A DNA stretch of 33,047 bases, taken from Selaginella moellendorffii. Lineage: Eukaryota; Plantae; Lycopodiophyta. The DNA is taken from positions 1-33,047 of the forward strand of contig NW_003314488.1 in NCBI RefSeq assembly GCF_000143415.4. The letters are read 5' to 3'. Of this stretch, positions 6,211 through 26,913 are shown one piece after another. The notes under the pieces are model-generated. The model ran no database searches, was not told where the DNA came from, and saw nothing but the letters and a program-made list of their open reading frames with translations. A program made the position numbers and the translations under genes. Every line of letters begins with the position of its first letter. The first letter of the stretch is position 1.

Positions 6211-6264
6211 TATGGCGTGCAATTCGTAAAAGGGTGAGTGTTACTATAGTAGATTTCACTCACA
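6211..6264 (+). repeat. Left terminal inverted repeat
   Basis: 26 bp perfect and 54 bp imperfect (7 mismatches) inverted match to 26860-26913. Confidence 0.95.
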
Positions 6265-6663
6265 ATACAGTGTTCATGTGGCAGTTTCTATTGGTTCGGC
6301 ATTAAATGTCATTTGGATTTGGCCGATGGGTCAATGATGTCCCTATAATATGAACAATGTGTTACACATAGATGCCACATATCATCAAGTTTGACCCCAT
6401 GACATGGGGATTCATCAGGTCATAGGGTTTAGGAGACGCTGCGGGGTGCTTTAGTGCTTTGTTATTCGGCATGTTTCTTGGTAGCAAATGTAGAAGGTAA
6501 TTTGGTTTGTTAGTGAGTGGTTTGAAATGTTTTTGTGGGCAGCGTTGGAAGTGGCTTTGATTTACTACTCGATTGTTCTCTATGGACTTTCAAGTTCCTA
6601 CCATGAGTATAGTTCCCTCCCTAGTTTACTTCAAATTTGTGTCATTGAAACTTTTTCTTCCAG

Positions 6664-8293
6664 GTTTACTAGAAGACGTGGAGGAAGATGAGGTGGATGG
6701 CCTTCCATCCAATTTTAGTGATTCGGACTGTGGTTCCAGTATAGATAGTGACAATGATGCTCTCCCAGAGGTTTGCTTAATTTCCAGCCTTCTAGATTCA
6801 TGATTTGCACGTTTCTAGGCCTTCTATAATTTTTTGCAATTGAGGGGATTCGGTAGTCCAGCTGCATTTGGCACTTGGATGCACCTGAAGATCCTCGAGA
6901 CTAAGACTACTGCTTACCTTGCATGCTATCTTAGAATTTCCAAGCCAACACTGTACAAATACATGTTGCTTGTCGATCCAAATTGGAGAGGTGTACATTA
7001 TAGAGTACCACCCGAAGAGGTACTTCATCACGTTCGAACTAATAATGCCATGAATCGAGGTGGCACAAACTGGGGGATTATCAATTTCTGATCCAGCTGT
7101 CGAACTGGAGGATACCGATTTAGCCGACGCCAAATTCATGAGGCCTTAGCCACTCACGATCCAAGTAGGCTGGAACAGAGGCACATGACAAGGATTCGAC
7201 GACGGATTTACAGGAATGAGGAGGCTTATGCACTTTGCCATATGGATTGTGAGTATTCTTTCATTTCTGCTTTTTTTTCAGCATATGTGGTAACATGTTT
7301 ATTGTAGCATATTGCAAGCTTGTAAGCTATGGTTTCTATGTACATGCCATTATTTGCAGGGCAACTCATTATATTATAGCTTGCGAGCTAGCTACCTCCA
7401 AAGAATCCCATACAATATTTAACACATATGCGTAGGCTGTTCGTCGATTTGGAAGGCCCAAGCGCATCCGGAGTGACAATGCTCCAGAGCACAATGAGGT
7501 TGAGAGGGACATGATCTGTTGTTGGGGTCCTGCAGCTAGAAGCTTCATACGTGGGACATCAACACGTAACCAGGTACTCACAGTGTTAGAGTTTTTCCAA
7601 ATAAGGACTCATAGGACTAAATCAAATTTGTTTTATAGCGCATAGAGCATTTGTGGAGAGAGCTCTTTGAGCGTGTGGTGTGGTTTTATAAGCACCTTTT
7701 TGAGTCCATGGAAGATAGGAATTCTCGATGTATCTAATCCATGGCACAACCAGAGTCTACGTTGTGTCTTTGCTCCGTACCTCAAGAAGGATATTTCACA
7801 CTGGGTTGCAACCTGGAACCTCCATGAGGTCCATCTGTATCAATGTGGTGATTACTTCAGACCATCTCATGTTCCTACAAACTTATTTCAACCGATGGAA
7901 CAAGAGCTTGGGTAACAATTTTGGTAATGTTACAGAATTCCTAATAAAATGTGCTTTTGGAGGATTATGCCGGCTGTTGGTGGAAAAGATATTGAAGACC
8001 TTCCCGGACCATTTCTCTCTAATGTCGAAGGTGCAACTTTGTCAGAGGTAATCTTTAGAGCAAGAATACAACAATTTCTTTAAATCTATTTTTTTGTGCT
8101 TGGCTACCTTATAGGCTCTTGGCACTGTTCGAAACCAGGCATTTTTGATGCATCGGGGGGACTCAACTTAGATAAGCAATATCTACTTCATTTGGATCTA
8201 ACAATGGAGTGTGTAATGGCTGATGTTGCGGGTGTAGATCTTCCACTTTACATCGAGAGTGCCTTGCTTACAGCAACACTAGTGAAGCGATGA
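6664..8293 (+). pseudogene. Spliced DDE transposase/integrase of the eukaryotic IS3/IS481-like (IS3EU-type) family, disabled
   Basis: The spliced reading gives an HTH-like YLACYLRISKPTLYKYM, then FSRRQIHEALATHDP...IRRRIYRNEEAYALCHMD|SYCKLVSYGFYVHAII...AVRRFGRPKRIRSDNAPEH...SFIRGTSTRNQ|RIEHLWRELF...WNLH. The D-D-E triad is at 7245, 7475 and 7645. Introns are 7249-7307 and 7574-7638. There are in-frame stops at 7089 and 7433 and a frameshift near 7720. The true start is uncertain and may be ~6470. Confidence 0.9.
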
Positions 8294-8519
8294 GCTTTGG
8301 AAAAATTATACTTGGCCATACTTGGAGAAAATTGAGTGTTCTTTAGTGTACATTTCAAATTTAAATTCAATTTTTGATTTGTTCAATTTTAGGGTTCCCA
8401 CGTTTGGGATTAGGGTTTTCACCAAGTCCCACCCATATTAATTGTGCCTTGGATACGGGGTGATTTCATTTTATGACATGATTTTGTCGATGGTTCGTTC
8501 GTTCTTCCAATCGATTCGT

Positions 8520-10086
8520 GTCATCTAACTGGAGGCAAGGCTTCTAGTGCACACTCCCCCGATTGCAAGACCATCGCCCAAGTGAGAGTGCCACAGCTGT
8601 GATGGTGGGTAGCTTCTCCTCGATCAAGTTTGCATAACCAATCCTTTGTGGTTTCTAGGCTCGAAGCAAGAACGCCGCACGCCTCAACAGCAGTAGACAC
8701 TATGCAGGAAACACCTCGCGAGCACGCAGCCAAGCACTCGATGTTCCGCAATCGGTACAGCCAACAGTCCCGCGAGACACATGCCAGCCACTTGATTTTC
8801 CAAGCTCCGTAGCAGGGACATCAACTCCAACAACATCCCATCCACAGCTCCCAACTGCATTTGAGCAAGCAGAGCGCTGCCTAACATTGCATACATTGCA
8901 ACATATGCGGAACCTCTAGCATGTTTCATTCTCCTCGCCTTCCTTGGAAAGTAGCAGCCCGAGCATTCGAAATGAGCAAGTCCGGACACCTCATGCCCAC
9001 GGTGTTGTCCAATCTGGAACACTGCCACCAACACCAACTAGAGGACGTGCTCACGGAATCCCATATAGTGCCATTGCTACTAGCCCCGCAACTCCACCAA
9101 CCACTACAACTCTCGCAACTCCATCTACCGGTACAAGTGCCAGTACCTGGCCATCTACCTCCCGAAGCAACAAGCGGTCTAGCTTGGTAAGTTTTTCATT
9201 TGTGCCCATTTGTTTTTTCCATGTGTTTTTCTGCGTAGGGTGAGTTCACAATGCCTCCACACCAGCGAGCTTATAGTTCCCCATCAGCATTCCACAACTA
9301 CTCCCAAAGATCGACATCATCATCTAGTGGAGCTTCGACATCCAGATATGTTCAAGCTGACCCTCAAGGCGGGCTGCCATGTGAGCCACAGGTATAACAT
9401 GACCCCATGCACTCTTCATTTTTTTCTTCTTTAGATTTGTTTAACTCATTTTTGTTTCACTGTGCTAGACTCTCTCACCGCTTGTGGCTACAGTGCACAC
9501 CTATGCCGATAACAATCGGCAGTCCTTATGTTGTCGTCGTGGACGTCGTGGCAGTCGATCCAAAGTCATTGGTGGGATGTCGTCTACGACACCCTTGGTC
9601 CCCCGGCTGTTCACCACAGTTCTTGTCACCAAGTGGATTGCAATCCCAAAGACTTGGCATGTACACTTATATGGGCGAAAAAGAGAGCCATCTGTGAAGG
9701 TGACGGAACTTGACGAGCTGGCAGTGGACCTCCCAGAGTGTCTCATATGGGGTGGCTTATACTCTAGTATTCCTTTCCAGCCCGGCACAGCCCAACATGC
9801 GATTCTACTATCACTCCAAGCCTCAGGAATCCAACCTTCATCCATGACCAACCCAGGAGCATTTGTCCGGCGTGCAAGGCAGTCCAATGGTGGTGAGGCC
9901 CATGCCGAGTCTGCAAAATTTGGCCTCAGCTCTATCCGGCCTTGCTACTGGCCTCCTCAAACATCATGGGGAGCAATAGCAAACAAGGCCAATGGCAATC
10001 GGGCAACAGTTATATATTTATACAATGTTATGGAGTATTTTACTGACAAACATTGGCTAAGTTATCAAAAGCAGGCCCGAGCACTC
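8520..10086 (+). pseudogene. 5' part of the transposon's HECT-domain gene (S/T/P-rich N-terminus plus ORF 9484 onward)
   Basis: Coding-like blocks are separated by short GT-AG introns (~8605-8658, 9187-9238). The frame ...QARAL joins EEKDVRE at 17434 when the Gypsy and one CACTC are removed. The start is uncertain and frameshifts are present. Confidence 0.6.
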
Positions 10087-11741
10087 TGTAAGCGACTAAA
10101 TTTTCCATTCTACTTTAGTCACTTAACCACACCTCCAACCACTTGGAGGAGTCTCATTTGCAACCTCCATATGTCCAATTCAAGACTTGGGGCTTGCTAG
10201 CCCCGAGAATGGCATCCATGCCACTCAACCTTTGCACTTGGTCCAAGTGCTTCACGTGTCCAATCCCATGACCGACACCCCAAGGCACCACCGATATACG
10301 AGCCCGTTACGCTAGGCCACGCTCATTCACCTTGGTCACATCGGTGGTCTAACACCACCTGCATTGCAATCCCATCTCTCCAAGACTGGGCCATCCGTCC
10401 ATGAGTGATCATCCCAGATCCACTCCTTAGCATCCTTAGGATGCCCACTGACAAGGGGAATAGCCTTCCCCAATATCCCTCTGTCAGTCCCCACTAAGTC
10501 CCTTTTGCCCTGGCCGTGTTGCCAACACTGCCACTGGATCGGGCCATGGCCGACATAGTCCCACGGTCCTCTGGGACTTCCTCACCACACGACTGTGTCC
10601 TTGGTCACTACCCCAGAGGATTGCTTCTCTTCCTTTCCACAGTTTGGGCCTTTGGGACAACATTTTGGAACACCGTGGCCTTACGCGAGCCACCTGGGTA
10701 CTCTCCCTGCCTTCCGCCCTTGGGTGCTCTAGCCATAGGCTTAGAGCAAGGTTCCGTTGAGCCACGCCTGGTATCCAAGTAGGTAGTGCCACCCACACTT
10801 GGATTGGGAGCATCGGCCAGTCGATCTCCCGGGGGAACTAGAGCCGGCTCTTGAACACTTCACCAAGCTACCCCGCTTGTCGGTCCATATTCACTCTAGT
10901 CTTGGACTTCCCAGTGGTCAGTTCATCACCCAACACTGGGTCTGGCCTTCCTGGGCCAAACTGGCCTTTCCTGGCCAAACTAGCTCCACTGCAGTCCTCC
11001 CCCTTACTATACTTTTGGAGCTCACCAAACCCCCCAGCGTCTGGGAGATGAATGCTTTGGGCTTTCACCCTCTTAGACTCGAACTCAGACTCGGACTTGG
11101 ACTCGGACTCGGACTCGGACTCGGGCTCGGTCTCGGCCTCCGCCTTAGTGTCGGTCTCAGTCCCGGTCTCGGTCTCGACCTCGGACTCCACCTCAAGTCC
11201 ATCTCGGACTCCATCTCGGACTCCGTCTCGGTCCATCTCGGACTCCATGTCGGACTCCACTTCGGACTCATCTCGGACTCCATCTCGGACTCCACCTCGG
11301 ACTCCGTCTCGGTCCATCTCGGACTCCACCTCGGACTCCACCTCGGACTCCATCTCGGACTCCGTCTCGGTCCATCTCGAACTCCACCTCGGACTCCACC
11401 TCGGACTCCATCTCGGACTCCGTCTCGGTCCATCTCGGACTCCATCTCGGACTCCATCTCGGACTCCATCTCGGACTCCGTCTCGGTCCATCTCGGACTC
11501 CATCTCGGACTCTTCCATGTGTCATGTGTTGGTCCTTTTGGGTCCCTTTTTGGAGCCTTGCTTATTGCTCGCTTCGTGCTTGTTCCTCAAGCACTTTGTT
11601 GGGAGTTCCACTCCCGCTCTCGACCTTTCAAGTCGGAGCTTTTAGTCCAAACGTGTTACGCTCATTTGGCTTTCGCTTCGGCCACTACCACGTGGCACCC
11701 TTCTGGCTCCACTTTGGGGCCTAGGGATTTTGTGTCTCACA
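10087..11741 (-). repeat. 3' LTR of Gypsy element (1655 bp)
   Basis: Direct repeat of 15816-17428, adjacent to the PPT. Confidence 0.95.
11073..11512. repeat. Tandem array of CTCGGA / CTCCATCTCGGA / CTCCGTCTCGGTCCAT units in the 3' LTR
   Basis: Hexamer-based low-complexity array, directly visible. Confidence 0.97.
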
Positions 11742-14700
11742 ACTCCACCACCCATAGATGAAGTTCGATGTCCTCATCGAACGGTAAACCCTTTTATAAA
11801 GTAATACCCACATGTATTATCATTTCCATCCTTGGCCCCCGGCCAATATTTGTCTATGGTTTGACACCGAAGGCTCACCATGCCTTGTCCATCCTCTAAG
11901 GAGCATAGTCTCTCCAACATAGAAACTCACTTGACCCCCTAGGGTGGTTTACTCCCTTTTATTGGTTCAGTTCTCGCTAAACCCGTTAGAAACACCCTCT
12001 CTAACTCAATTCCACTACTCATTCTCGAGTAATCTTAGATTCCATTGACATAACCTTTGCATTTTGGAACTTTTAATTTTGATTTCTCCGAGTCAATTTT
12101 CTAGGTGTCTCCGACACCTTACGTTGCACATGGTGCAACTCCACTTCCCTATCCTAGGAAGTTCTTTACTTGAGGGTACTATCATCCTCTCTTCGATATC
12201 GTGCCACCTTTGGGCACTAAGTTCCAGTTATCATAATTGGTGCTAGGGCTGCCCACGGCCCTATTATTTGGCTACCTTACCGCTCCCCCCTTTGGAGCAT
12301 TCACTTTCGCCAAATCGGAGCGGTTAGGAATCCATCCTTGGGGAAACATTGCCTTTCCCACAATCCGTTAGCACCCAACACATTAGTGTTCTCGGCTTAA
12401 CTTTGCCATTTGGATTCTTTTCCATGATTCCCATGGCTCTTTTCTTAGCCACTAGTCTTTTGCTCCTATCCTTGATTGTTGCACCCAGCAACATAGGATC
12501 GCTCCCTCCATTTTCGAGGTTTCCTTTCAATTCCATAGCAAACACTTTGCTTTTGTCAAGTCTAGAGGGTGTTCACCCCTAGTATGTCTCTTTAACATTT
12601 CCGGCTGTGGGCTCTATCCACGGCTTAACTTTTGAGACCCTCCCTTGGATCTCTTATAGAGACTACTTTCTTCGGATTTACTATGCCATAGCAGTGACAT
12701 AGCTCATTTCCCATAGGTGCTCTTTCCACTTGGTCACCTTGACCAAGCCACACCATTATCAATAGTTCAAATCAACACTTTGAATTAGGAATCATATCCC
12801 TTAACCCAAACAAAGACCTTGTCCTTGTTTAGCCACAAGATCACCTAGTGATCTCATCTTGACCCCTTAATAGGTCTACCAATAGGAACTAGGTCTTCCA
12901 GACCCTTCTAAGTTGTTGACTATGACCCCGAGGGCATCCCCCACACTTGGCGGTGCACCCAAGCCAGCCCTTCCGGCCAAGGATCCATAGCAACTGAGAC
13001 TGGGTGTCCCCATCTCATTCACCACGTCCTTGGTGCCTTTTGCACCAAAGTGTTCAAGTTAGATATGCCGAACTTTCACTCTAAGCAATCTAACCGTGCA
13101 TCACGACTCCGGGGCATCCCCCGCTTGGCAGTGTGCCCAAGCCAATCTCCTCATTGAGAGTCCATGACCACCAAAATATGAATGTCCTCATATTCCAAAC
13201 CATCACCACGCCTTAGTGATTTGAGACTTGAACCCAAGCACTAGAGGGTCGGGACTCGAACCCAACCTCCATATATGCATCTACGGACGGCATCACCCTA
13301 GATGCCTGGCGTGACTCCCCACGCCGGTGCACCAACTTATACTTAAAGCGCGCTATAGATCGCAGCTTAGGAACCTAGTTCCTCCACACTGCCAAGTCCT
13401 CTCACTTGACAAGTCTGTGATCATGCATGGACTCCTCCATGCTTGGCCCCATAGCCCACCCTTTTTGAAGTTATCACCTTCAACTAGGGTATTTGTTCCC
13501 CATGACTTGCCAATCTCGCTTGGCAAGTCCTCCGACCACTGTAACATGGTCCCTGCATAAGCATGAAAGTCCTTGACCATCGACTTTCGTTCAAAGCCCT
13601 CTCTTTGAACACTCGGGAACTACTTCCCTAACCTTGATAGCCTTGCCTCATGGCAAGCTTCAAGACCACGCTTCTGCTGTGCCATTCTGATTTCGCGCCT
13701 TTCATGAACCATTTACACTTGGCCTTTTTAGGTACTAAGCTACCTAGAATCATCTTTGGGAACTTTGAAGGAACTCTGTCCCTTAGCTTGCTAAAGCTTC
13801 CTTTTTCGCAAGCTTTATAGTTGCCATATAGTCTAACATGGACAATTCCATATTTTAGACTCTCCATGGCATCACAGTTGCTAGCAACAACATCCTCGAG
13901 CACCCTTTTAATTCTTCACTCCCAACTTGCATAACCCCCATTGGATATGCCCTTCGATTTCTATGGTTCAGTTCCATCCCAATACTACTTGCCTTTTGGC
14001 CCCATATGTTTCCTTTGGTTATTCTCCTCCAGATTAGGAGGATAGCTTTGCACATTTTACTATGCCTTAGCAAGTATTCTTAGGGATGAACCTACCTGAT
14101 AGCCTAGGGAGTGGTTCCTCAATCTTGGGCATGCTCACCTTATAATCCCACACACCGGGATTAACGTTGCTACTTATGGGCCTTTACATGCCCATCACTA
14201 GCCTTGCCAAACTTCCATTTTTGGCTTTGTCCAATTCGGGTAGACAGTCTTCTCCTATCTCCATAACCTCGGACATTTGGATAGCACCTTTTATCCATCA
14301 TTCGCTAGGGACTTAGTCCCTTGAGCCTTACCTATTGCCCTTGCGACACGAAACACCACCTTTTGGTGTTCTAGAATGTTTGGGTGTCCCAATGATGGCC
14401 TCCTGACCATGAGCATTCCCGTTTACGACATTGACTTACTATATCGTAACATAAGCAATTTATCCTCCGTAAGGGTATATCTAACTTCCTTATGCCATTA
14501 AAAAGTCTTCGGTAGCTACCCTCTACCCGTTTAACCAATTATCTTGCACCTCTTGCTTAGTTGCCTCATAGTTGTCAAGTCCTACAACTCATTACTGATG
14601 CTTCCACACCTCTATCATTGTTTTGGTCACCACACTCTACCACATGCCTTCTACCTTAGGCTATGCCATTCCCATTTCCGTTGGGATTCCTTTAGCAAGG

Positions 14701-15800
14701 GGTTCTTATGAACCCACCAACATAACCTCAAGGTATCATACCTTGGCACATTTGGTGTCTCCACACCATTGGCCCCACGAGCCTATCCTTATGACACTAC
14801 TTATTAGTGTCTAGGTCTTTGCCAAGACCAATATAGTTGTGCCTCATGCTAACTATCCATTAGCACCGCACCATAGTGTTTGTCCCCAACTCTGGGCCAA
14901 AGTTTCTTTCTTTTGGGAACATCTTTCCCACAACTTTAGTATGGCACATTCTGCCATCAATGAGATATTTCCTGTTCTCATACTTGGATCTTATGATCCT
15001 CCCCATACCTCATGGGGCACCATACACTTCAGTCTAAATGCTTCAATCAATCCCTTAGGACCATTCCCTGACCCCACTTGAGTCATCTAGCATTTTTGGA
15101 CTTCGCTAAACTAACGACCCATAAGGTCCTATTTTCGAGGTGCCAGCTCACTCAAATACAACTTCATGTATTCATGTCCTACTCATAAGGACCATCTTGC
15201 AAATGTTACTCCAACACTTCATTATTTCCCGTTCTCTGTGGGCTGCCTTTGCCCCTTAGGAGTATCCGTCCCTATGATGAGAATGCCGACTCATCCTTTG
15301 AGCACACCCCTAACTCCTTGGGTTCATTCCAGCATTTACAAAAGGTAGCCCCAGCTACCATTTCGAGGGCTCTTGCCCTCATCCGTACTTGACCTCTCAT
15401 GGTCATCAATTCAGGTCTCAAATTCATGAGCACCAGCCTCAAGTACGTGCGGATTATCTTGTGACTCCTTTATTGTTTTGGAGTCTGGATCTTTCCCGTG
15501 ATCCCAATTATAGTTGTTTACCACAACTACCTTAGTTAGTTTGCTGAGTCAAACGCTCATCCGGACCACATCCTCAACTCTTTGAGGGAAACCTTATACC
15601 GTTCCCAAGATCCCGAAGTCGTTCCCTTACTGGCCCTTTTCCATCCACCACATCGCACACAAGTTCACACATGAACTTGAGTGGAGAGCCATGTCCTCTC
15701 GACATGCTACTCCTCGAGGATAGGTCCATATCTAGGACCTTCCAATTTCAATACCAGTGGTGATATACTTGGCCACCAATAAGAGTCGGACTAAGGAACA

Positions 15801-15812: not shown

Positions 15813-15815
15813 AGT

Positions 15816-17428: not shown

Positions 17429-18039
17429 CACTCGAGGAGAAGGATGTTCGTGAACGTAAGTCATTTTTTTTTTAAGTTCCCTCCTCACAAATATATGTTG
17501 TGGTCTTTGCAGTTGTAGCTGCTACAAATACCTTGACTGCAAATGATGATCCAAGGCCAGCCACGCAGGAACCAAACCCTTGCAAGAATAATGAAGAAGA
17601 AGACTCTGCGGATGAAGAGGACATTCTTCCATTACCGGAAGAAACTCTCCCCACACAAGACAACATGGACATTAGCAGAGTCGAAGAACAAGGTGATGGT
17701 GGGGATGAACCGCACCAAGGATCTCCAGAGACATCCTTGTCACCAGAGATAGTGGCTCCAGGCCATGCAGCTGGTAAAAAGCACTAACATAAATGAATAT
17801 TTTCTTCATTTTCTAATTTCTGAGTGCAGATAGGCCAATGGTAGTGTATGACAGTGATGGTAGAGGCCTTGAAGACCATGGTGTGCCTCCACCCCCCTTT
17901 CTAGAGGGAAGTAGCTCCACTCCGTTTACGCTTATAGAGTTGCTTGACAACTTTTCTACAGTAGAGTAAGATAATTGAAAATTTTGCTATTCAAAATTGA
18001 ACTAATGTTTGCATGTAGATTGTTAGAACAGCAACAAAG
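17429..18039 (+). pseudogene. Middle exons of the HECT-domain gene (acidic, disordered linker)
   Basis: Exons LEEKDVRE / VAATNTLTAND...PGHAA / RPMVVYDSD...LDNFSTVE / LLEQQ are joined by phase-consistent short GT-AG introns. The frame continues as QKWIDATNAF after the Copia is removed. Confidence 0.75.
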
Positions 18040-18189
18040 TCTAACGAAAGGTGAAACCGTGTGATGGTGCTCAAGATCCGTCATAGCATATATGGAATGG
18101 AAAATGTACATATGTGTGACATGGTGAACCGGTGAAGACTCGTGTCTCTCCACGTGGACTAGCCATGTGGCACAGGGCCACTCTCAACA
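18040..18189 (-). repeat. Copia 3' LTR (150 bp)
   Basis: Identical to 22430-22579 by eye. Confidence 0.97.
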
Positions 18190-21100
18190 CTCCCACTGGC
18201 ACTGTGGCCATCAGGAGTGATGCTCATCAGTGGAGAAAGTCCCAGCCCTTCGCGATGGACTTGAAATCGATCTCGGGGTAGTGCTTTTGTGAAGATATCT
18301 GCAACCTGAGTGGTCGTGTCGCAGTAGATCAGCTCAATTGTGCCATCTTCCACTTTCTCACGAACGAAATGATGATGAATCCCAAAGTGTTTGGTGCGTG
18401 AATGAAAGCGAGGATTGACCGCTAACGCAATGCAGCTTTGATTGTCACAGAAGAGGCGAGTGGGAGTCTTCACACTCACACCAAGGTTAGAAAGTAGTGA
18501 GCGTAACCACATACCTTCTTTGGTAGCTTGTGAGGCTGCCAAATATTCTGCTTCCGTACTAGAGGTTGCCACTGTACTTTGCTTCCTGCTGCACCACGAG
18601 ACTGTCGCACTGCCCAGGGAAAACGAATAGCCAGAGGTGGACTTGCGTGTGTCACAGTCTCCCCCAAAATCAGCATCACAGTACCCCGTGAGGGTAAGCG
18701 CTTTTCCCTGGTAGCACAATCCAAGGTAAGTAGTACCTCGAAGGTACCTGAAGATGCGTTTCACCGCTGCCCAATGTTGAGATCCAGGATTAGCCAGGAA
18801 TTGGCTAACTTTGCTCACGGCAAAAGAAATATCTGGGCGCGTACAAACAGCTGGATACATGAGACTGCCAACAGCTTGTCTGTAAGGGATGGAGTCCATG
18901 GCTCTCTTGTCGTCCTCTGTCTCAGGAGACATGGCTTGTGAAAGCTGGCAGCCTAGTTCCATTGGTGTCGCCACTGGATTAGAGCTCGTCATAGAAAACC
19001 TGGCCAGCATATCTTCTATATACTTGGCTTGGTGAAGATAGATAGTGCATTGAGAGCGATCACGCACAAGTTCCATGCCAAGAAAGTAGGAAGCCGAGCC
19101 AAGAGTTTTCATCTCAAATTGGCTGCAAAGATCTCACTTAACCTGGAGAAACATTAAGCGATGATTATGGATGACAAGAGTATCATCAACATAAAGAGCG
19201 ATGATCACAAATGATTCACCCTCCACCCGAATATAAAGATTCGGGTCTGCCTCGCTACAGGAAAAGCCCACACTTAGTATAAAATCGTCAAAGCGTTTGT
19301 ACCAAGATCTGGGTGCTTGTTTCAAGCCGTAGACAGCTTTCTTGAGAAGCCAGAGATGATCCTCTTTTCCAGCGGCTAGAAATCCTTCTGGCTGTGCCAT
19401 ATAGATTTCTTCTTCAAGCGCGCCATAAAGAAACGCCGTGGTCACATCCATCTGTTCCAGATCAAAGTCTCCCACCGCAGCAAAATTAATCAAGGAACGA
19501 AGAGTAGAATGCTTAACCACTGGAGCGAAGGTGTCGTTGTAGTCAAGTCCAGGAACATGCGAGCATCCTTTCGCCACCAATCGCGCCTTGTAGCGAACCG
19601 AGCCATCAGGATTAAGCTTCAGAGCATACACCCACATGCTCTTGATAATCTGGCGATCGGAAGGCACAGTTGGAACAAGAACATGTGTCTCGTTCTTTTG
19701 CTGTGAAGCAATCTCGGCTTCCATTGCTACACGCCAGTAAGACGCTTCCTGCGAGGCCATGGCTTCTCCATAGGTCCTCGGAACAGTAGGAGTAGCTGCA
19801 CGAGAGGAGACCATTGTCTCGATGAGACGCTCAGTAGGCCGCCTTGTGCGGATCGATCTGCGTAGAGGATCTGGAGGAGGTGGCGGGGTTGGTGGTGTTG
19901 GAGTAGAAGCGGGCATGGGTTGTTGCGTAGGGACTGTTTGAAGCGGCACAGTGATCGTGCCAACAGTCAACTGATCTTGTTCCGCTTCAACGTCATTTTC
20001 TTCGGTCAAGGTAGGTCTAGAACCTTGACTAGAAGGAAGAAAAGAATTCTCGTTGAAAACCACATCTCTGCTCAGGATCTCCTGCTTCGTGATTGGATTC
20101 CAGAGACGATAGGCTTTGTGATCGAAGCCCACAAACACAGCCTTCTGGCTCTTGGGGTCCAATTTCTTGCGCATTCCATCAGGGATGTGTGCCCACGCTT
20201 CACACCCGAATATTCTCAGATGCGTAACTGTAGGTTTCTTGCCACTCCATGCTTCTTCAGGAGTGATGCCAGCAAGGGCAGAGGTGGGGAGCCGGTTCTG
20301 GAGATAGTTCGCCGTCAAGACAGCGTGAAACCAGAAGCTGCGAGGCAAACCACTGGAAAGTAGCATTGCCCGAGCACTCTCCACTAGTGTGCGATTCTTG
20401 CGCTCAGCTACGCCATTCTGTTGTGGAGTCTCTCGCGTTGTAAGTTCTCGCACAATCCCTCCTTGCTCACACAGCTGGTTGAAAGCATTAGAAGTGAATT
20501 CGCCTCCACCATCACTTCTCAATCGCTTGAGCATTTTCCCAGTTTGTGTTTCTCCCATATCCTTGAAAGTCTGGAAGTAGTGTAACGATTGGGATTTGCG
20601 AGCCATAGGGTAGATCATAGTGCGACGACTGTAGTCATCAATGAAACTGATAAAGTATTGGATACCTCCCACTGCTGTGGTGGCCATCGGGCCACACACA
20701 TCAGTGTGTACAAGTTCCATGAGCTCTGTAGCTCGAGATGCTCCAGTCTTGGGGAAAGGTTGGCGAGTAGATTTTCCTAGCTGACAGCCCTGGCAAAATG
20801 GAAGAACGGCTCTTGGGTCCAGGTCTAGACCTTCAACCATCTGCTCGCGTGCGAGCTGCTTGATTCTATCAGCACTAGGATGCCCCAGGCGTGCGTGCCA
20901 AAGCTCCAGTGAGTGACTGGTCGTTGTCTTTTGTGCGTGTAGGCCCAGACTCCGTCCAGCAAGATCTGGCAGCATGGTAAGGCGGTAGAGGTCACGCCGT
21001 CCAGGCCGGGACGCTGTGAGGATGGCTCCTGTGGTCGAGATCAGCTGGAATTGGCGAGGTGTAATGGCGAACTGATACCCATCCTCAGCAAATTGTCCCA

Positions 21101-22259
21101 CAGAGAACAAATTAGCACATAAACCAGGAATATAAAGAACCTCGTGGATCTTTACGACTATTCCTTGTGGTAAAGTGAACTTGATGGTTCCAATTCCTTT
21201 CACAGCAAGCTGCTGGGCATTGCCAACGATGACATACTCCTCTGTGGCTGTAGGATCATAGGCTTCAAAGTACTTATCACTGTTGAACATATGGTCTGTA
21301 GCAGCAGAATCCAGGTAGATGCACTCTGTAGACAGTGCTGCCACTGCCATAGCTCGTGACAAGATGAAGGCGTGTACCACCTTTTTCTTTGCATTGTTCC
21401 TTACAGGCTTGAGAGATGGATTTTTCACCCAGCATTGAGCTTCGTCATGGCCTTTCTTGTTGCAATGAGAACACTTGGGCTTCTTGGATGAAGAGGCTCC
21501 TTGTTTCCCTTTGTTCACTGTTTCTTTCCTGAGAGAAGAGTAGAATGCAACGGCCTCTGATCCTGTTGTTGCTCTTCGTCTCAGATCATCGTCCTGGAGG
21601 CTACTGATCACGCCATTCAGGGTTAGAGGAGTTCCAGTGGTAGTGAGGCTACGTATGAGAGGATCAAAGGATGGAGGAAGTGTGACGAGCACCAGCTCTG
21701 CTTCTTCTTCATCCTCTATCTTCGCTCCCACATCCTTAAGATCATCTAAGATTGTTCTCGCTGCAGCAAGATGATCCTTGAGGTCGTCCCCTTCAGCCAT
21801 CACCAGTGCATGAAGCTGCTTCCGTAAAAAGATGCGATGGGATGTTGAAGGGATCTGGTAAGTCTGCTTCATGGCCTCCCACGCTTCCTTTGCACTCTTG
21901 CACCGTCCAATGCAATGGAATTCTCGCCCCTCCAGCGCTGCATGGAATTTGCCCAAAGCTCTCCGGTCCTTCTTGCGATACTTCGCAGTTTCATCCACTG
22001 TAGCTGTATCTGGAAGTGTCTCAGTTCCTGTGGTGATGTCCCAGAGGCCTCGTTCATCCATATAGGATTCGAATTTTGTCTTCCAGAAGCGCCAGTTCCT
22101 CCCATCAAATTTTGGTGGATTTGCGTCCACTGAAACGATATCCGCTGTAGGCACAGTCGAATTTGTGATGGGAGGGGAAATAGGTGGTGGATTTGGAGGC
22201 AGATTTGTAGGAACAGTGGCTGCCATGGGTGCTGACACCCAATCCCACCACTCGTTCAA
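18159..22259 (-). CDS. Copia Gag-Pol polyprotein, broken by a single in-frame TGA at 19134-19136
   Basis: Motifs: gag PKFDGRNWRFWK, zinc knuckle CSHCNKKGHDEAQC, protease YLDSAATDH, GAG-pre-integrase LWHARLGH, integrase HTDVCGP/RSDGGGEF/AERKNR, RT YKARLVAKG and YVDD, RNase H YCDADF/EAEY/CDNQS/ADIFTKAL. ORFs 19134-22259 and 18159-19112 are in the same frame (QVK*DLCSQFEMK). Confidence 0.96.
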
Positions 22260-22417
22260 GTCTAGGTCCAGGTTCTTAGTCGTCCAGTGCCTCTTGCAAG
22301 GCCTGGAGCGCTTGGATTAGGGCATGCCTCTGTCTACGTAGACGGAGGCTCCAATTCACCCTAGCAAGTGTCGTCCTGATCCTATGGTTTCGTATTCTTC
22401 TCGCTCTCCCAGGCATT

Positions 22418-22429
22418 GCTCTGATACCA
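22418..22429 (-). promoter_or_regulatory. Copia primer binding site (initiator Met tRNA)
   Basis: TGGTATCAGAGC directly after the 5' LTR. Confidence 0.95.
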
Positions 22430-22579
22430 TCTAACGAAAGGTGAAACCGTGTGATGGTGCTCAAGATCCGTCATAGCATATATGGAATGGAAAATGTACA
22501 TATGTGTGACATGGTGAACCGGTGAAGACTCGTGTCTCTCCACGTGGACTAGCCATGTGGCACAGGGCCACTCTCAACA
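22430..22579 (-). repeat. Copia 5' LTR (150 bp)
   Basis: Identical to 18040-18189. Confidence 0.97.
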
Positions 22580-24955
22580 CAAAAATGGATTGATGCCACC
22601 AATGCATTTAATGAAGCTGTTCAGTTAACCACTCAGGATAGTGCCAATTTCATCATGCTGCAGATTGAGGAGGTTTCTGCCTTACAGGATGCCACCACAA
22701 CCCTTGAGGTGAGGGCACAGGGGGATGCTGAAGTTCTCTCACAGGTGCAGTGGCTGAAACACAAGCTTCTTGGTTGCTTTGGCGTGGAGAGCACAAGTGA
22801 CGAGGAAATGCTAGATGCTATTGTTAGACACCCTGAATTCCATTGGGCTGGCGGTGAAATATTTCTGCGGCGCGTGCTTTTCAACCAAGCCATGCCTCAT
22901 TGGCAAGATTGGGAGAGTCTTCTTCTTAAGCTTGGCCTTTCAGAAGCACAATACGAGGATGTGTTTTATGACAACACAATCCAACAACTCCTTGCTGAAG
23001 TAAGTATTAATGTGCCTCCTTCAATTCTTGAGTCCACAATAGCATGGTTCATTGAGAAGAGGTACGTGTATCTATTTCTTAGCACTTAGTACCATCTTAT
23101 GGTTTTGTGCAGGGACCTACGTAAGAATTGGGTGGCTGCACAACAATTGAGAAAACTATTTGACACTACTGAAACACTGTATTGTAAGTTCTCTTGTTTT
23201 TGCATCGAGAAGGCCATGCTTCGGCCATACAGACTTGCTCGTACACGTTTGAGGCCGTCTCGCATTCTGGTAAGCAATGGATTGCCTATGAATTGGAGTT
23301 ACTTCACTTGTCCTTCTAGATTGCACCAAACAATGAATTCAATTGTTTCCAATTCACCTTCAATCACCGAATTACAAAGTGGTCTATGCGTCTGAGATTG
23401 GGGGAGCTTTGGTGTGGGAGGAATCCACAATAGATGTGGGTGGGCCATATGCAAACTATGCGGAGATGAATATGTCCTCAGTGTAATCTCCGTACACGTT
23501 TGGCTGGTACAGGCTCGTACACGTTTGAGGCCGTCTCGCATTCTGGTAAGCAATGGATTGCCTATGAATTGGAGTTACTTCACTTGTCCTTCTAGATTGC
23601 ACCAAACAATGAATTCAGTTGTTTCCAATTCACCTCCGCAGGTGAATTGGTCCTCAGTGGACGCGGAGATGCGGAGATGCGGAGATGAATATGTCCTCAG
23701 TGTAATCTCCGCACACCGAATTACAAAGTGGTCTATGCGTCTGAGATTGGGGGAGCTTTGGTGTGGGAGGAATCCACAATAGATGTGGGTGGGCCATATG
23801 CAAAAGCCATTAGGGAGGCTGTTCGCCAGATTCTAGGATCGGTAAGTCTAATTTTCACTTGGCTCACTAAAGTAATTTTGTGTTACAGACGCGTGGACTG
23901 TTTGTGTTTAGGGAAGGAACCACATATTGGCATCCCAGGATGCTAGTGCATTCTAGGACGTTGCGACAAGAAGAGCGGGATGTGGTAAGTTAAGTTTAAA
24001 GCATAAGTTTTATATACTCCTCACTTTTATATGCACAGGCTACCTTTGTGGGATGGTTGCTATTCCAAGCGTTCGAATGTAATACACATGTTTCTCGCGG
24101 GTGTACAATTGCAACATTGGCAATTGCAGTTGGAGAGGTTCCAAACGAAGATGACCGACGACTTGCCCGAGGAGGACTATATGAGATGGACCTCAAGGCA
24201 TGCGCACCGCATATCTGGAATGCACTCAACCAATTGCGAGGTGCATCAAGCTTAAAGGAGGAGGGTGATCAGTGCAAGTCTATGGATTCCATCCTAGAGA
24301 ACCCTGCAATTACTGACTACAATGCAGTGCTTGAGTCTAGACTCACCGAACTTGGTGAAGGTTATGAGAATGCTGTGGAGGCATGTGTGGCTGCGGTGGT
24401 TTGGCATTACCTATTCATCGAGCCAAACGTAGTGGGAGACTTACTCTGAGATGGCTTCCAACACTCAATGTGCATGGAAGCTCGTCAGAGGCCTTACAAG
24501 AGTCCAGCATTGCTAGGTGGGCTTTCACTCATTGGGACATATGCTTTGTTACAAGTCTTCCGGGTAAGGACGATCATTCCTCCCGCGGAGTTCATCAACT
24601 GCCTGATCTTTGATCAGGACTTTGGAGAAAACTTCCACATCTGGATTGTAGACATCATTCGAGGTAACTATTTACTTTCACAAACAACTAAAACTCTTGT
24701 ATGTTTGAACATTTTATAAATATGAGCCCGAAAGAGTTATCCAAGTTCCATCACTTTGCGGTTGATTCTCCAGAGTTCCGACCGGGAGAGCTTATTTGGA
24801 TCCAAGTTGAGAGACAGCGTACATCATCTACTCAATTTCCCAGGTTCTCCACATGCACACGAGAAGTTTTCTTCCCTTTAACATACCCGTCAAAGGAGTG
24901 GACCAAAATCCAAAGAGCTTGTATGGATTGGGCTGATGTTGTGGAAGTAATGTAG
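22580..24955 (+). pseudogene. 3' part of the transposon-borne gene with a divergent C-terminal HECT E3 ubiquitin ligase domain
   Basis: HECT-like motifs in the right order: EESTIDVGGPYAKAIRE (GExxxDxGG box, ~23770), FVGWLLFQA, DLKACAPHIWNALNQL, L*DGF, MSPKELSKFHHFAVDS and FPRFSTCTREVFFPLTYPSKE (LPxAxTCxxxLxLPxYxS; Cys codon 24854-24856). Lesions are a frameshift near 23765, a stop at 24447 and a probable AG>AA acceptor at 24719. Confidence 0.82.
23237..23803 (+). repeat. Rearranged local tandem duplication inside the HECT gene
   Basis: 23237-~23495 repeats blocks of 23513-23803 almost identically but in shuffled order. Confidence 0.93.
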
Positions 24956-25076: not shown

Positions 25077-25667
25077 TTATAGGCATTTGCGGCCCTTAGT
25101 ACCCTTTTGGCTTATGCTTGTCTCACCAAGGGTAATCACTATAGCTTCCAAAGCAACTCCCAATTTAGGTTCTGGGTCAAAACTATCGAGCTTGGGTGCT
25201 ACATGATGCCCATCCTCGCTTGAGGAACTCTCAACCTGTTTGGTAGAACCCAAATCACCCTCTGGGTCTGTGAACTCATCCTCACTTGCATCTCGAGCAG
25301 TAACATATCCCTCGCTGTCGCTTTCTTCAGCAGGACCTTTCCCCTCGGTGATTGGCACAAGATTAGAAGTAGTCTTGGGTTGCCTTGTCGGAGGGATTGT
25401 CGAGCCTTGAGAGGAGGAGGCATCATATAGAATCCTCGGTCCTGTCCCCTGTTGGATCCATTGTTGTGCCTCAAAGAAGTCATAAAATCCTCTCCAGTTT
25501 GCCATGCCAGGAGGAAACCCAGAAACCTCAAACATTGCAAAAGGGTTAGACCATATAGGAAACTATTACAAATCTACTCTTACCAAAGTGAGCACGAGCT
25601 TCCAACCCCTGAAAACTCCAGTTCTTCGGCCGCAGCGCACGGCATACATTGGATAGTTTTGCCCCAT
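25077..25667 (-). CDS. Two-exon protein: N-terminal RNase H1 hybrid-binding (Cauli_VI/viroplasmin) domain plus acidic tail, ~177 aa
   Basis: Exon 1 (25667-25584) is MGQNYPMYAVRCGRRTGVFRGWKLVLTL. A 57 nt GT-AG intron follows (25583-25527). Exon 2 (25526-25077) begins VSGFPPGMANWRGFYDFFEAQQWI. This matches the YAVRxGRxxGIYxxWxxxxxxVxGFP...KxFxxxxEAxxF pattern. The frame is intact. Confidence 0.8.
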
Positions 25668-25695
25668 GCTTGGAAACCCTTTTTACAAATTTCAA

Positions 25696-25968
25696 AATTT
25701 GAAACGGTTATGATTGGAAAATATTGTAAGTGTCCATTGTCATTGCTCTTTTCACCTAAATGTTATTACATGCAATTGCAACTCCCATATTCTCAAATCT
25801 CCTTCAGCATGTTCCTCTTGAGAGAACTCCAGGTCCAATTTGAAACAATTATAATTGGAAAATGTTGAAAGTGTCTATTGTTATCCTGAATGTTACTACA
25901 TGCAATTGCAACTTCCACATTCTCAAATCTCCTTTAGCATGCTCCTCTTGAGAGAACTCTAGGTCCAA
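25696..25968. repeat. Two diverged tandem units of ~135-140 bp
   Basis: 25696-25836 and 25837-25968 share AATTTGAAAC...ACATGCAATTGCAACT...CCTCTTGAGAGAACT. Confidence 0.9.
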
Positions 25969-26859
25969 ACATCAACACTATGCACTTTTGCATAGTACAC
26001 AATTGAAATATGAGCCCCACCAATTCATCGAATTGGTTAGACTTCAACCTACTTTTGAGTCATATGCAAATTTTCTAAGCATCATAGTACAAAACTCAAG
26101 TGTTGAGAGAGCTACACTAGAAATCAATTGTAACGAAAGATAAACTCAATGGGATCTATTAAAGACATGACTCCAGATAGTATATATCCATGGCTTTGCA
26201 ATGGAGCTAGATGGAGTTCACTTACGTTTGCTATGAACACTATGTTAAAAGAGGTGTGCCCAGGTGTAACTCAATTTCCAACATTTTCCAGCTATGAGAG
26301 CCTAGGAGTTCTTCGCGTCCATGGTGAATGCACCTCAAGAATCACAGTGCAAGACAGAGGAAGCAAGAGGATTCAATGATTGCCTAGACACGGCAGCGGG
26401 TAACAATGGAAGCATCGATGATTGCGAGTAGCACAGCGGCGGTCGGCAATGTGGGGAGGACATGGCGATGGCTGTCGATGACGATCAAGGCTGCCACACT
26501 CCCAAATTCTAGATGGAGTTCACTTACACTTGCTATGACACTGTTAAAAAAAGTGTGCCAAAAAAGGATAATTTAATTCTTTTGCCATGAGCGCCAAGAG
26601 CAAGATGTGAGAACATAGTGCTCTAGATAAGGTAGTATGGTATGCAATTTAGTTGATTGTCATTTGGTTTGCAACATTAACAACTTGCTCGAATGCATGG
26701 GATGAATGGGTCTATGGGCCATGAATGGCTCCATTCCATATATAGCATGGGTCATTGCTATGGGCATGATGCCCCATCCGGGGCATAAGGATTGGATATT
26801 TGTAAAATATTCTATGCCTGTGTTTTTTTCACTCGGACCAATAACAGGCACACACGTGG

Positions 26860-26913
26860 TGTGAGTGAAATCCACCGTTGTAAAATCCACCCTTTTACGA
26901 ATTGCACGCCATA
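26860..26913 (-). repeat. Right terminal inverted repeat
   Basis: Reverse complement of 6211-6264. Confidence 0.95.

What the first reader, a model, noticed from the sequence alone, without database searches (positions are those of the whole stretch)
6211..26913. Three-gene IS3EU-like DNA transposon in a plant genome: DDE transposase + HECT E3 ligase + RNA:DNA-hybrid-binding protein
Seen: matching TIRs 20.7 kb apart with a target duplication enclose three spliced genes that the ORF track does not show. Removing the two nested LTR elements and one copy of each TSD leaves an ~8.8 kb element. Knowledge: the transposase motifs belong to the eukaryotic IS3/IS481-like integrase family. From memory, the IS3EU superfamily has TAY...RTA termini and was described mainly from animals and fungi. 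Inference: this is a plant representative whose cargo forms a functional module, for example ubiquitin-mediated removal of silencing or host factors plus R-loop recognition. I know of no description of this combination in plants.
Basis: partly seen in the sequence, partly recalled or inferred. Interest (0 to 1): 0.93.

Follow-up and report, generated by a model that had tools for sequence, protein, structure and literature searches.

The report
Dead GingerRoot transposon with HECT gene
This is a dead copy, split by two retrotransposons, of a known kind of jumping gene (IS3EU/GingerRoot) in the spikemoss Selaginella moellendorffii; its unreported feature is that it carries a ubiquitin-ligase (HECT) gene, which I also found inside related transposons of other organisms, plus a small RNA:DNA-hybrid-binding gene.

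Summary
Window 6211-26913 is one TIR-bounded DNA transposon with TATGG..CCATA ends and a 26-nt perfect TIR. It is interrupted by a non-coding LTR element (10087-17428) and a young Copia (18040-22579). Six uninterrupted or near-complete copies elsewhere in the S. moellendorffii assembly are 89-97% identical. They align straight through both excision joints.

- **Superfamily:** the transposase is IS3EU-type (Pfam rva_4). This superfamily is already described in Selaginella as GingerRoot (2019), so "new to plants" fails.
- **State of this copy:** the transposase and HECT genes carry stops and frameshifts. Only the hybrid-binding-domain (HBD) gene is intact.
- **Target duplication:** this family makes 5-bp duplications, not the usual 6.

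What seems undescribed is the gene set.
- **HECT gene:** the long second gene ends in a very divergent HECT domain.
- **HBD gene:** a two-exon gene on the opposite strand encodes a stand-alone RNase H1-type HBD.
- **HECT outside Selaginella:** I found HECT genes inside the TIRs of six other IS3EU families in environmental eukaryotic contigs. HECT therefore looks like a recurrent companion gene, not a one-off capture. The HBD was seen in Selaginella only.

This scan has reported the same family at least five times on other DNA of this genome. No searchable paper links IS3EU to HECT.

The parts
6206..6210 (.). Left copy of the 5-bp target-site duplication (AATAT)
   Evidence: Five other copies also have 5-bp duplications.
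6211..6264 (+). Left terminal inverted repeat, starting TATGGCGTGCAATTCG
   Evidence: I11. The same terminus occurs in L001-L005 and L008.
6573..8293 (+). Transposase gene with several exons (HTH plus DDE core of the rva_4/IS3EU type). It is broken by a stop at 7433-7435 and a frameshift near 7697-7716.
   Evidence: Pfam rva_4 on pieces 7436-7642 and 7646-7912 (E 2e-6 and 8e-6), and an HTH at 6819-7088. Defects were found by comparison with other copies and gene models. This is annotated gene model P0020, SELMODRAFT_432255.
8659..10086 (+). HECT-protein gene, first part: a low-complexity N-terminal region. It may be spliced in frame to the transposase (donor at 8281/8282, acceptor at 8658/8659).
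   Evidence: tblastn of gene models P0013/P0003; splice sites read.
10087..17428 (.). Nested non-autonomous LTR element. LTRs are 10087-~11728 and 15816-17428, 95-96% identical, and contain 12-bp tandem arrays. TSD is CACTC.
   Evidence: No ORF of 100 aa or more in the internal part.
17434..18039 (+). HECT-protein gene, second part (acidic region)
   Evidence: The reading frames continue across both excision joints; tblastn.
18040..22579 (-). Nested young Ty1/Copia LTR retrotransposon with identical 151-bp LTRs; TSD CAAAG/CAAAA
   Evidence: Pfam RVT_2, Retrotran_gag_2, rve and others on 19137-22259(-).
22585..24955 (+). HECT-protein gene, third part. The HECT domain is at about 23714-24955 and the catalytic Cys lies in the motif FSTC. 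It is broken by a stop at 24447-24449 and a frameshift near 24904.
   Evidence: Pfam HECT on the last exon is weak (E 0.14). On the 91%-identical paralog P0001 it gives E 2.2e-4, 21.4 bits. The ESM Atlas places P0001 385-747 with HECT clusters by features (0.95) and by structure (TM 0.54-0.61).
23456..23702 (+). Tandem duplication private to this copy; it repeats a HECT exon
   Evidence: D7, D10. Absent in L001, L002, L004 and L005. Joint 23364->23703 seen in DNA contigs of run X1.
25077..25667 (-). Intact two-exon gene (25667-25584 and 25526-25077, with a 57-nt GT..AG intron) for a 177-aa protein: an N-terminal RNase H1-type hybrid-binding domain and an acidic tail
   Evidence: Splicing read. 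Pfam PF01693 Cauli_VI, E 1.3e-8, 35.4 bits (cutoff 21), covering the whole profile. Human RNase H1 HBD 3bsu, E 0.0025.
26860..26913 (-). Right terminal inverted repeat, ending ...CGAATTGCACGCCATA
   Evidence: I11. Loose ends at 26913 in runs X16 and X20.
26914..26918 (.). Right copy of the 5-bp target-site duplication (AATAT)

Best explanation
Window 6211-26913 is a dead copy of an autonomous-type IS3EU/GingerRoot cut-and-paste transposon family of about 8.5 kb in Selaginella moellendorffii. After it inserted between two PPR pseudogenes, making a 5-bp duplication, it was hit first by a non-coding LTR element and later by a Copia element. It also gained a small internal tandem duplication, stop codons and frameshifts.

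The family's founder encoded three things:
1. A DDE transposase of the rva_4 type, with catalytic motifs CHMD / RSDNAPEHN / NQRIEHLWRE in the majority of copies. It presumably binds the TATGG..CCATA inverted ends and performs excision and integration.
2. A long protein, on the same strand, that ends in a very divergent HECT ubiquitin-ligase domain with its catalytic cysteine.
3. A small protein, on the opposite strand, made of an RNase H1-type hybrid-binding domain plus an acidic tail.

HECT genes also lie inside the TIRs of six other, distantly related IS3EU families from environmental eukaryotes. I therefore read the HECT protein as a long-standing accessory gene of this transposon lineage, not a passenger. 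It most likely ubiquitinates a host or element protein to aid transposition, post-excision repair or escape from silencing. The hybrid-binding protein is a lineage-specific addition. It may bind RNA:DNA hybrids or dsRNA, to dampen RNA-directed silencing or to find R-loop-rich targets.

Shown: the structure, the family membership, the copy number, the domain identities, and the HECT-transposase linkage in other families. Inferred: every functional role of HECT and HBD.
For: - Structure and copies: (six other copies, 89-97% identical; 5-bp TSDs AATAT, GAATG, GCTCA, TTTTT, ACTAA/ACTAT, CAAGC/CAAAC).
- Organism: the window equals a whole 33,047-bp scaffold carrying SELMODRAFT_432255, and all close protein hits are S. 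moellendorffii.
- Multi-copy: 1370 DNA contigs at 90-100% identity lay on the right half of the element in run X1. Differences are dominated by transitions.
- Transposase: Pfam rva_4.
- HECT: Pfam just under threshold on two paralogs. Atlas features 0.95, with 92 of 100 hits HECT, and structural TM 0.54-0.61 to 10 of 10 HECT clusters. The catalytic STC motif aligns with Pfam-positive HECT C-lobes.
- HBD: (above threshold).
- Open exons for all three genes in the majority sequence of six copies.
- Not a recent host capture: a 149-aa HECT piece searched against 1.84 billion representatives found only copies of this element, all at least 67% identical.
- HECT in other families:
  - L006 element 5712-11898, TATGGAA..TTCCATA ends, 6-bp TSD; HECT 30.7 bits and rva_4 279 bits, both inside the TIRs.
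  - L012 and L043 have the same layout with perfect 6-bp TSDs.
  - 30 of 79 environmental transposase loci have a HECT about 0.4-2.2 kb away, in 8 data sets.
  - Pfam HECT is above threshold in L009, L017 and L037.
  - Six transposase families (44-55% identical) each have a HECT C-lobe (34-51% identical).
- Literature: GingerRoot/IS3EU features (PMC6839031, PMC10045372, PMC12730594).
Against: - The Selaginella HECT shows no BLAST similarity to the environmental transposon HECTs. The profile-profile match is weak (E 0.043). Common descent of the two HECT groups is therefore not shown, and independent captures remain possible.
- Pfam HECT stays below its curated cutoff for every Selaginella sequence.
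- My own AlphaFold model failed (pLDDT 37).
- All copies examined are dead, and dN/dS against the majority sequence is noisy (0.2-1.9). There is no direct sign of selection on HECT or HBD within the family.
- No RNA evidence for any of the genes.
- The 5-bp TSD departs from the 6 bp typical of the superfamily.
- The source organisms of the environmental contigs are unknown.
Confidence: 0.85

Rival explanations
1. The transposase and HECT are one gene. Splicing joins the last transposase exon to the HECT open reading frame, giving a transposase-HECT fusion protein of about 1,300-1,500 aa. The element would then have two genes, like the Ginger1 transposases that carry C-terminal OTU or Ulp1 protease domains.
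For: - Both genes are on the same strand.
- The HECT ORF starts directly at a strong acceptor (TTTCTAG|G, window 8658/8659) with no start codon. A GTGAAG donor at 8281/8282 is in phase with it.
- Two annotated gene models from different copies (P0013, P0003) use this join.
- Precedent: Ginger1 transposase-OTU/Ulp1 fusions (PMC2836005).
Against: - The transposase frame runs on to its own stop in the majority sequence.
- The gene models are automatic predictions on decayed copies, and other models split the genes (P0017 with P0001; P0016 with P0014).
- In five environmental families HECT is on the opposite strand, so it is a separate gene there.
- No RNA data.
Confidence: 0.3
2. HECT and HBD are passengers. 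The founder of this Selaginella family captured host genes, as GingerRoot elements often do. They spread only because the family amplified and have no role in transposition. The HECT genes in the environmental elements would then be separate, unrelated captures.
For: - 22 of 77 GingerRoot elements (28.6%) in S. lepidophylla carry host gene fragments (PMC6839031, section 17).
- The Selaginella HECT is not detectably related to the environmental transposon HECTs beyond the shared fold.
- HBD was not found in the environmental elements.
- No selection signal among copies.
Against: - The captures described for GingerRoot are fragments of 84-1,654 bp and usually come with loss of the transposase. 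Here whole multi-exon genes sit beside a transposase in every copy.
- Their exons are open in the majority sequence.
- No host parent appears among 1.84 billion representative proteins.
- HECT is retained across six transposase families that are only 44-55% identical, which is hard to get by chance capture.
Confidence: 0.15

Closest known systems
GingerRoot elements of Selaginella lepidophylla (Cerbin et al. 2019, PMC6839031), now merged with Repbase IS3EU as IS3EU/GingerRoot (PMC10045372)
   Same: - Same plant genus.
- Integrase-related DDE transposase without the HHCC or GPY motifs.
- TA..TA termini and TIRs.
- Same size class (about 8.5-8.9 kb), tens to hundreds of copies, mostly inactive.
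   Different: - TSD is 5 bp in six of six copies here, against 6 bp (rarely 7-8) there.
- TIRs are shorter: 26 nt perfect and about 55-85 nt imperfect, against 100-150 nt.
- The paper describes only the DDE region and captured gene fragments, and never mentions HECT, ubiquitin or a hybrid-binding gene.
Fungal IS3EU families that carry TET/JBP dioxygenase and alpha-kinase genes (PMC12730594)
   Same: - TAYGG..CCRTA ends and TIRs longer than 30 bp.
- Multi-gene IS3EU elements with accessory enzymes in a fixed order beside the transposase.
- The accessory genes are proposed to counter silencing.
   Different: - The accessory genes are TET/JBP and alpha-kinase, not HECT and HBD.
- 6-bp TSD.
- Fungal hosts.
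Ubiquitin/SUMO-pathway domains in other DNA transposons: Ginger1 transposase with OTU or Ulp1, Mutator-like elements with Ulp1, Helitrons with OTU (PMC2836005)
   Same: A transposon-encoded enzyme of the ubiquitin system. That paper already proposed that the ubiquitin pathway takes part in transposition or repair.
   Different: Those are deconjugating cysteine proteases, often fused to the transposase. Here the enzyme is a conjugating E3 ligase (HECT), in a different superfamily.
RNase H1 hybrid-binding domain / caulimovirus P6 N-terminal domain (Pfam PF01693 Cauli_VI; human HBD structure 3bsu)
   Same: Full-length match to the 44-residue domain. The conserved Tyr and Trp are in place.
   Different: - Stand-alone domain with no RNase H catalytic domain.
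- The Lys-Lys pair of the human domain reads Arg-Gly here.
- Encoded by a DNA transposon.
Environmental IS3EU elements found here (L006, L012, L043 and relatives)
   Same: rva_4 transposase plus a HECT gene inside TATGG..CCATA inverted ends.
   Different: - 6-bp TSD.
- Intron-less transposase.
- HECT is mostly convergent with the transposase.
- No HBD gene.
- Their HECT passes Pfam's threshold, while the Selaginella one does not.

Membership tests
IS3EU/GingerRoot superfamily of DNA transposons | DDE transposase of the IS3/IS481-like integrase-core type (Pfam rva_4) | tested here: met
   rva_4 on two window pieces (E 2e-6 and 8e-6) and on paralog models (41-51 bits). D, D and E motifs are present in the majority of copies. 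The nearest non-Selaginella relative, P0027, is a 279-bit rva_4 protein in a canonical IS3EU element.
IS3EU/GingerRoot superfamily of DNA transposons | TA..TA termini (TAYGG..CCRTA) with terminal inverted repeats | tested here: met
   TATGGCG..CGCCATA in the window and six other copies. The motif is as given in PMC12730594 and PMC10045372.
IS3EU/GingerRoot superfamily of DNA transposons | 6-bp target-site duplication (described as 'usually' or 'mostly' 6 bp) | tested here: not met
   5 bp in all six copies with both ends: four perfect and two with one mismatch. The environmental relatives L006, L012 and L043 have 6 bp. The literature words this as typical, not absolute, so I treat the family as a variant within the superfamily.
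IS3EU/GingerRoot superfamily of DNA transposons | Transposase groups with IS3EU/GingerRoot in a phylogeny | not tested
   No reference IS3EU or GingerRoot protein set could be fetched. Only Pfam assignment and nearest-neighbour evidence are available.
HECT E3 ubiquitin ligases | Bilobed HECT domain recognised by the family profile | tested here: inconclusive
   Pfam HECT gives 21.4 and 20.7 bits (cutoff 23.9), on the C-lobe only, for paralogs P0001 and P0013, and 12.2 bits for the window exon. The ESM Atlas places P0001 385-747 with HECT clusters: features 0.95, and TM 0.54-0.61 over about 300 residues in 10 of 10 rows. My own fold failed. Sequence searches of solved PDB chains and a profile of alignment A1 found no HECT chain.
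HECT E3 ubiquitin ligases | Catalytic cysteine about 35 residues from the C-terminus | tested here: met
   Cys in ...FPRFSTCTREVFF..., 33-34 residues from the end. It aligns with the invariant STC of Pfam-positive transposon HECTs.
HECT E3 ubiquitin ligases | Ubiquitin thioester formation and transfer | not testable with these tools
   Needs biochemistry.
RNase H1-type hybrid-binding domain (PF01693) | Match to the domain profile above the curated threshold | tested here: met
   35.4 bits against a cutoff of 21, profile positions 2-44 of 44.
RNase H1-type hybrid-binding domain (PF01693) | Residues that contact the hybrid in the human domain (Tyr, Trp, Phe-Lys-Lys; from my knowledge of the 3BSU structure) | tested here: inconclusive
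   In the alignment to 3bsu, Tyr and Trp are kept. The Lys-Lys position reads Arg-Gly.

The most novel reading that the evidence does not exclude
A HECT ubiquitin ligase is an old accessory gene of a large branch of IS3EU/GingerRoot transposons, needed for their function. It would be the conjugating counterpart of the OTU and Ulp1 proteases carried by Ginger1, Mutator-like and Helitron elements. In Selaginella it may be spliced onto the transposase itself, and it is joined by a stand-alone RNA:DNA-hybrid-binding protein that counters RNA-directed silencing or steers insertion to R-loops.
Probability: 0.3. Interest if true: 0.75.

Novelty: new variant of a known kind. Interest (0 to 1): 0.55.

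Why it matters
The superfamily and its presence in Selaginella are known. What its elements encode beyond the DDE core is not described in any paper I could search.

An E3 ligase kept inside the inverted repeats of at least seven IS3EU families suggests that these transposons manipulate host ubiquitination. That would extend the old idea, drawn from OTU and Ulp1 domains in other transposons, from deconjugation to conjugation. It would also give a concrete gene to test for roles in transposition, repair or anti-silencing.

The stand-alone hybrid-binding gene and the 5-bp target duplication are further departures from the described type. This particular copy is dead and has no biological role of its own.

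Tried and rejected
- **PDB sequence searches.** Searches with HECT pieces and with a profile of the Selaginella HECTs found nothing.
- **Atlas on a window piece.** The feature search with the 149-aa window piece gave only noise. The N-terminal 400 aa of the HECT protein gave no usable hit.
- **AlphaFold2.** The model of P0001:370-747 with a 10-row alignment failed (mean pLDDT 37), so no fold search was run on it.
- **Relatives of the Selaginella HECT outside Selaginella.** None were found:
  - 1.84 billion representatives;
  - two word-based searches;
- **Transposase alignment.** Aligning two gene models to rebuild it mis-paired different exons and was dropped.
- **dN/dS.** Values for each copy against the majority sequence are too noisy and are biased by the excess of transitions, so they show neither selection nor its absence.
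- **Identity correlation.** The correlation of transposase and HECT identities (r 0.98) is driven by within-family pairs. I do not use it as evidence of co-evolution.
- **RNA.** No run on record as RNA holds the stretch. The two possible RNA runs only touch 26296-26509 and the right TIR, and they run on into other sequence.
- **Empty site.** I could not look for one in the other haplotype, because no tool searches this genome and my single read-laying run covered only the right junction.
- **Other superfamilies.** hAT, Mutator, CACTA and PIF were rejected on termini, TSD and the transposase family.
- **Consensus sequence.** A majority sequence of the six transposon copies was computed in scratch only, to read exon structure.

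Full report
**1. What is in the window**

The first 26 bases from 6211 (TATGGCGTGCAATTCGTAAAAGGGTG) are the exact reverse complement of the last 26 bases up to 26913. Similarity continues to about 55 nt at 87% (pair I11) and faintly to about 85 nt. The five bases before and after the element are both AATAT.

Two nested LTR elements lie inside:
- **10087-17428.** LTRs of 1.64 kb, 95-96% identical, flanked by CACTC, with no ORF of 100 aa or more inside.
- **18040-22579, minus strand.** Identical 151-bp LTRs, flanked by CAAAG/CAAAA. It has a nearly intact Ty1/Copia polyprotein with gag, integrase and RVT_2 domains.

**2. The organism, and proof that the reconstruction is right**

A 149-aa HECT piece was searched against 1.84 billion representative proteins. 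It found only 12 proteins, all at least 67% identical. The word-indexed database names the ones it holds as Selaginella moellendorffii hypothetical proteins. One of them, SELMODRAFT_432255 (P0020), lies on a contig of exactly 33,047 bp. The window is therefore a whole small scaffold of that assembly.

I fetched the loci of several of these proteins. The reconstruction aligns end to end with four of them:
- L001:7665-16156 (8492 bp)
- L002:4237-12694 (8458 bp)
- L004:6579-15119 (8541 bp)
- L005:5247-14008 (8762 bp)

It also aligns with the truncated or rearranged copies in L003, L007 and L008, at 88-97% identity. Single alignments run straight across both excision joints, so the two nested insertions are delimited exactly.

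About 247 bp (window 23456-23702) is a tandem duplication private to this copy. Some DNA contigs of run X1 skip it.

In that run, 1370 contigs at 90-100% identity lay on the right half of the element. Their differences are mostly transitions, as expected for many decaying, methylated copies. Contigs from two other runs match up to 26913 and then diverge, which fixes the right end independently.

**3. Target duplication**

| Copy | Left / right flank |
|---|---|
| window | AATAT / AATAT |
| L001 | GAATG / GAATG |
| L002 | GCTCA / GCTCA |
| L004 | TTTTT / TTTTT |
| L005 | ACTAA / ACTAT |
| L008 | CAAGC / CAAAC |

All are 5 bp. No shift of the element boundary gives a 6-bp duplication.

**4. Superfamily**

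Two window pieces hit Pfam rva_4, and an HTH lies upstream. Paralog gene models hit rva_4 at 41-51 bits. The majority state of six aligned copies has open exons with the motifs CHMD, RSDNAPEHN and NQRIEHLWRE.

The ends match the TAYGG..CCRTA ends reported for fungal IS3EU (PMC12730594) and the TA..TA ends of IS3EU and GingerRoot (PMC10045372).

GingerRoot was described in 2019 in S. lepidophylla. It has a 6-bp TSD, 100-150-bp TIRs and 3.9-12.9-kb elements, and it is restricted among plants to bryophytes and lycophytes (PMC6839031). It forms one lineage with IS3EU at 99% bootstrap (PMC10045372). So the superfamily call is right, but the claim of novelty in plants is not.

**5. State of this copy**

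- **Transposase.** It has a stop at 7433-7435, where other copies read Gln, and a frameshift near 7697-7716 in the exon that holds the catalytic Glu.
- **HECT gene.** It is cut into three pieces by the two retrotransposons. It also carries the tandem duplication, a stop at 24447-24449 (Arg in other copies) and a frameshift near 24904 that replaces the last 20 or so residues.
- **Other copies.** All six copies compared have at least one stop in the transposase.
- **HBD gene.** It is intact here, and also in L003 and L004.

**6. The HECT gene**

By sequence alone the evidence is thin:
- The window's last exon gives Pfam HECT E 0.14.
- Paralogs P0001 and P0013 give 21.4 and 20.7 bits, just under the 23.9 cutoff, on the C-lobe only.
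- PDB sequence searches and my own AlphaFold model gave nothing.

The ESM Atlas holds P0001 itself. For residues 385-747:
- 92 of the 100 nearest clusters by language-model features are HECT, with a top score of 0.95 and 200 shared features.
- The Atlas model superposes on ten of ten HECT clusters, with TM 0.54-0.61 over about 300 residues.

The motif order also reads like a HECT domain when compared by eye with Pfam-positive HECTs:
- N-lobe start: VVYASEIGGALVWEESTIDxGGP
- a later LF motif
- C-lobe: FSTC, with the Cys 33-34 residues from the end
- terminal: ...LYGLG

I accept it as a real but very divergent HECT domain. About 900 residues of low-complexity and unassigned sequence precede it.

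**7. The hybrid-binding gene**

On the minus strand, exon 1 (25667-25584) and exon 2 (25526-25077) are joined by a 57-nt GT..AG intron in phase. The spliced N-terminus matches Pfam PF01693 (RNase H1 N-terminal domain / Cauli_VI) over the whole profile, at 35.4 bits against a cutoff of 21. It also matches the human RNase H1 hybrid-binding domain 3bsu. The rest of the 177-aa protein is acidic and Ser-rich, and there is no RNase H catalytic domain.

**8. Is HECT a one-off capture?**

The only non-Selaginella hit of the transposase search was P0027, from an ENA metagenome assembly, 35% identical. Its contig (L006) holds a 6187-bp element with these features:
- ends TATGGAACGCC..GGCGTTCCATA;
- TIRs of about 190 bp;
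- a perfect 6-bp TSD (TGGCTG);
- inside it, a HECT gene (C-lobe 30.7 bits, above threshold) followed by the transposase (rva_4, 279 bits).

A metagenome scan with P0027 gave 79 loci. Thirty of them, from eight data-set prefixes, have L006-like HECT sequence about 0.4-2.2 kb from the transposase. In most it lies within about 1.4 kb and is convergent. Many of the other loci are too short to show it.

- Pfam confirms HECT above threshold in L009, L017 and L037.
- L012 (7444-14887, TSD GATAGA) and L043 (6607-15458, TSD GACATC) show both genes inside the inverted ends.
- The loci fall into six transposase families, 44-55% identical to each other. Their HECT C-lobes are 34-51% identical.

So a HECT gene has been kept beside this kind of transposase through deep divergence.

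Two caveats apply. The Selaginella HECT is not detectably similar to these HECTs beyond the fold, and the source organisms are unknown. The HBD was not found in the environmental loci.

**9. One gene or two?**

The HECT reading frame begins directly at a strong splice acceptor (window 8658/8659) and has no start codon of its own. A GTGAAG donor at 8281/8282, just before the transposase stop, is in phase with it. Two gene models from different copies use this join. A transposase-HECT fusion, like the Ginger1 transposase-OTU/Ulp1 fusions (PMC2836005), is therefore possible. Only RNA data can settle it, and none was found.

**10. How it most likely works**

- **Transposase (established for the family).** The DDE transposase binds the inverted ends, excises the element and integrates it with a 5-bp staggered cut.
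- **HECT (inferred).** It ubiquitinates a host or element protein. The known parallel is the recurrent presence of ubiquitin/SUMO proteases in Ginger1, Mutator-like and Helitron elements. Their authors took this to mean that the ubiquitin pathway takes part in transposition or repair (PMC2836005). Fungal IS3EU elements carry TET/JBP and alpha-kinase genes thought to counter silencing (PMC12730594).
- **HBD (inferred).** It binds RNA:DNA hybrids or dsRNA. From my own knowledge, the same domain in caulimovirus P6 belongs to a protein that suppresses RNA silencing, which makes an anti-silencing role a reasonable guess.

None of these roles was tested.

**11. Novelty**

No paper in the searchable library holds both 'IS3EU' and 'HECT'. 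The GingerRoot paper contains neither 'HECT' nor 'ubiquitin'. A survey of plant HECT genes lists nine for S. moellendorffii, all in the six cellular subfamilies. S. lepidophylla GingerRoot elements without captured fragments average 8.88 kb (PMC6839031, section 17). That is the same size class, so they may well hold the same genes.

The same family has been reported by this scan at least five times on other scaffolds. My verdict is a dead member of a known superfamily whose gene content and TSD length are an undescribed variant.

Noticed in passing
window 746-2813 and 30864-33047: Both ends of this 33-kb scaffold are a 2-kb inverted repeat, 97-99% identical, made of retrotransposon RT/integrase-like sequence (weak RVT_1 hit at 1479-1823). 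It could be two inverted copies of one element or an assembly artefact of a small scaffold.
   Followed up: partly
window 4373-5789 and 27693-30032 (minus strand): The transposon sits between two decayed paralogous PPR genes, which are direct repeats 80-90% identical. The right one keeps E, E+ and DYW-deaminase motifs (Pfam, 27696-28037).
   Followed up: partly
window 11065-11560 and 16810-17245: The LTRs of the nested non-coding LTR element contain long arrays of a 12-bp unit (spacings 10/12/22). These translate as Gly/Leu/Arg or Ser/Asp repeats in spurious ORFs.
   Followed up: no
window 18040-22579: The nested Copia has identical LTRs and a polyprotein interrupted only once (1041 aa plus 317 aa). 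It is a very recent insertion, much younger than its host element.
   Followed up: partly
window 25755-25838 and 25885-25968: A subterminal direct repeat (84 nt, 92% identical, 130 nt apart) lies between the HBD gene and the right TIR. A joint in X1 contigs (25725->25879) shows that some copies have only one unit.
   Followed up: no
L007:9704 and L008:8967; L008:5950-6004: Two scaffolds carry a copy with nearly the same left flank (gct[a/g]cttaaacaagc), perhaps the two haplotypes of one locus. L008 also has a solo right TIR with the same flank as the full element's right end, which suggests a local duplication or rearrangement.
   Followed up: no
L006:5712-6126 and 11591-11898; L012, L021, L043 TIRs: The long TIRs of the environmental IS3EU+HECT elements are built from about 21-bp subrepeats (for example CGCGATCCTCGATCCCCACAC), possibly arrays of transposase-binding sites. 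The Selaginella family lacks such arrays.
   Followed up: no
L006:6711-7136 and 11 other environmental loci: An N-terminal ORF of the environmental HECT proteins (no Pfam hit) is conserved at 36-42% identity across families. It is an unassigned domain that travels with the HECT domain.
   Followed up: no
run X5 (organism B), window 22722-27548: A run labelled as a different organism holds contigs 90-99% identical to the HECT, HBD and flank regions. It is either a close relative or the same species under another label.
   Followed up: no
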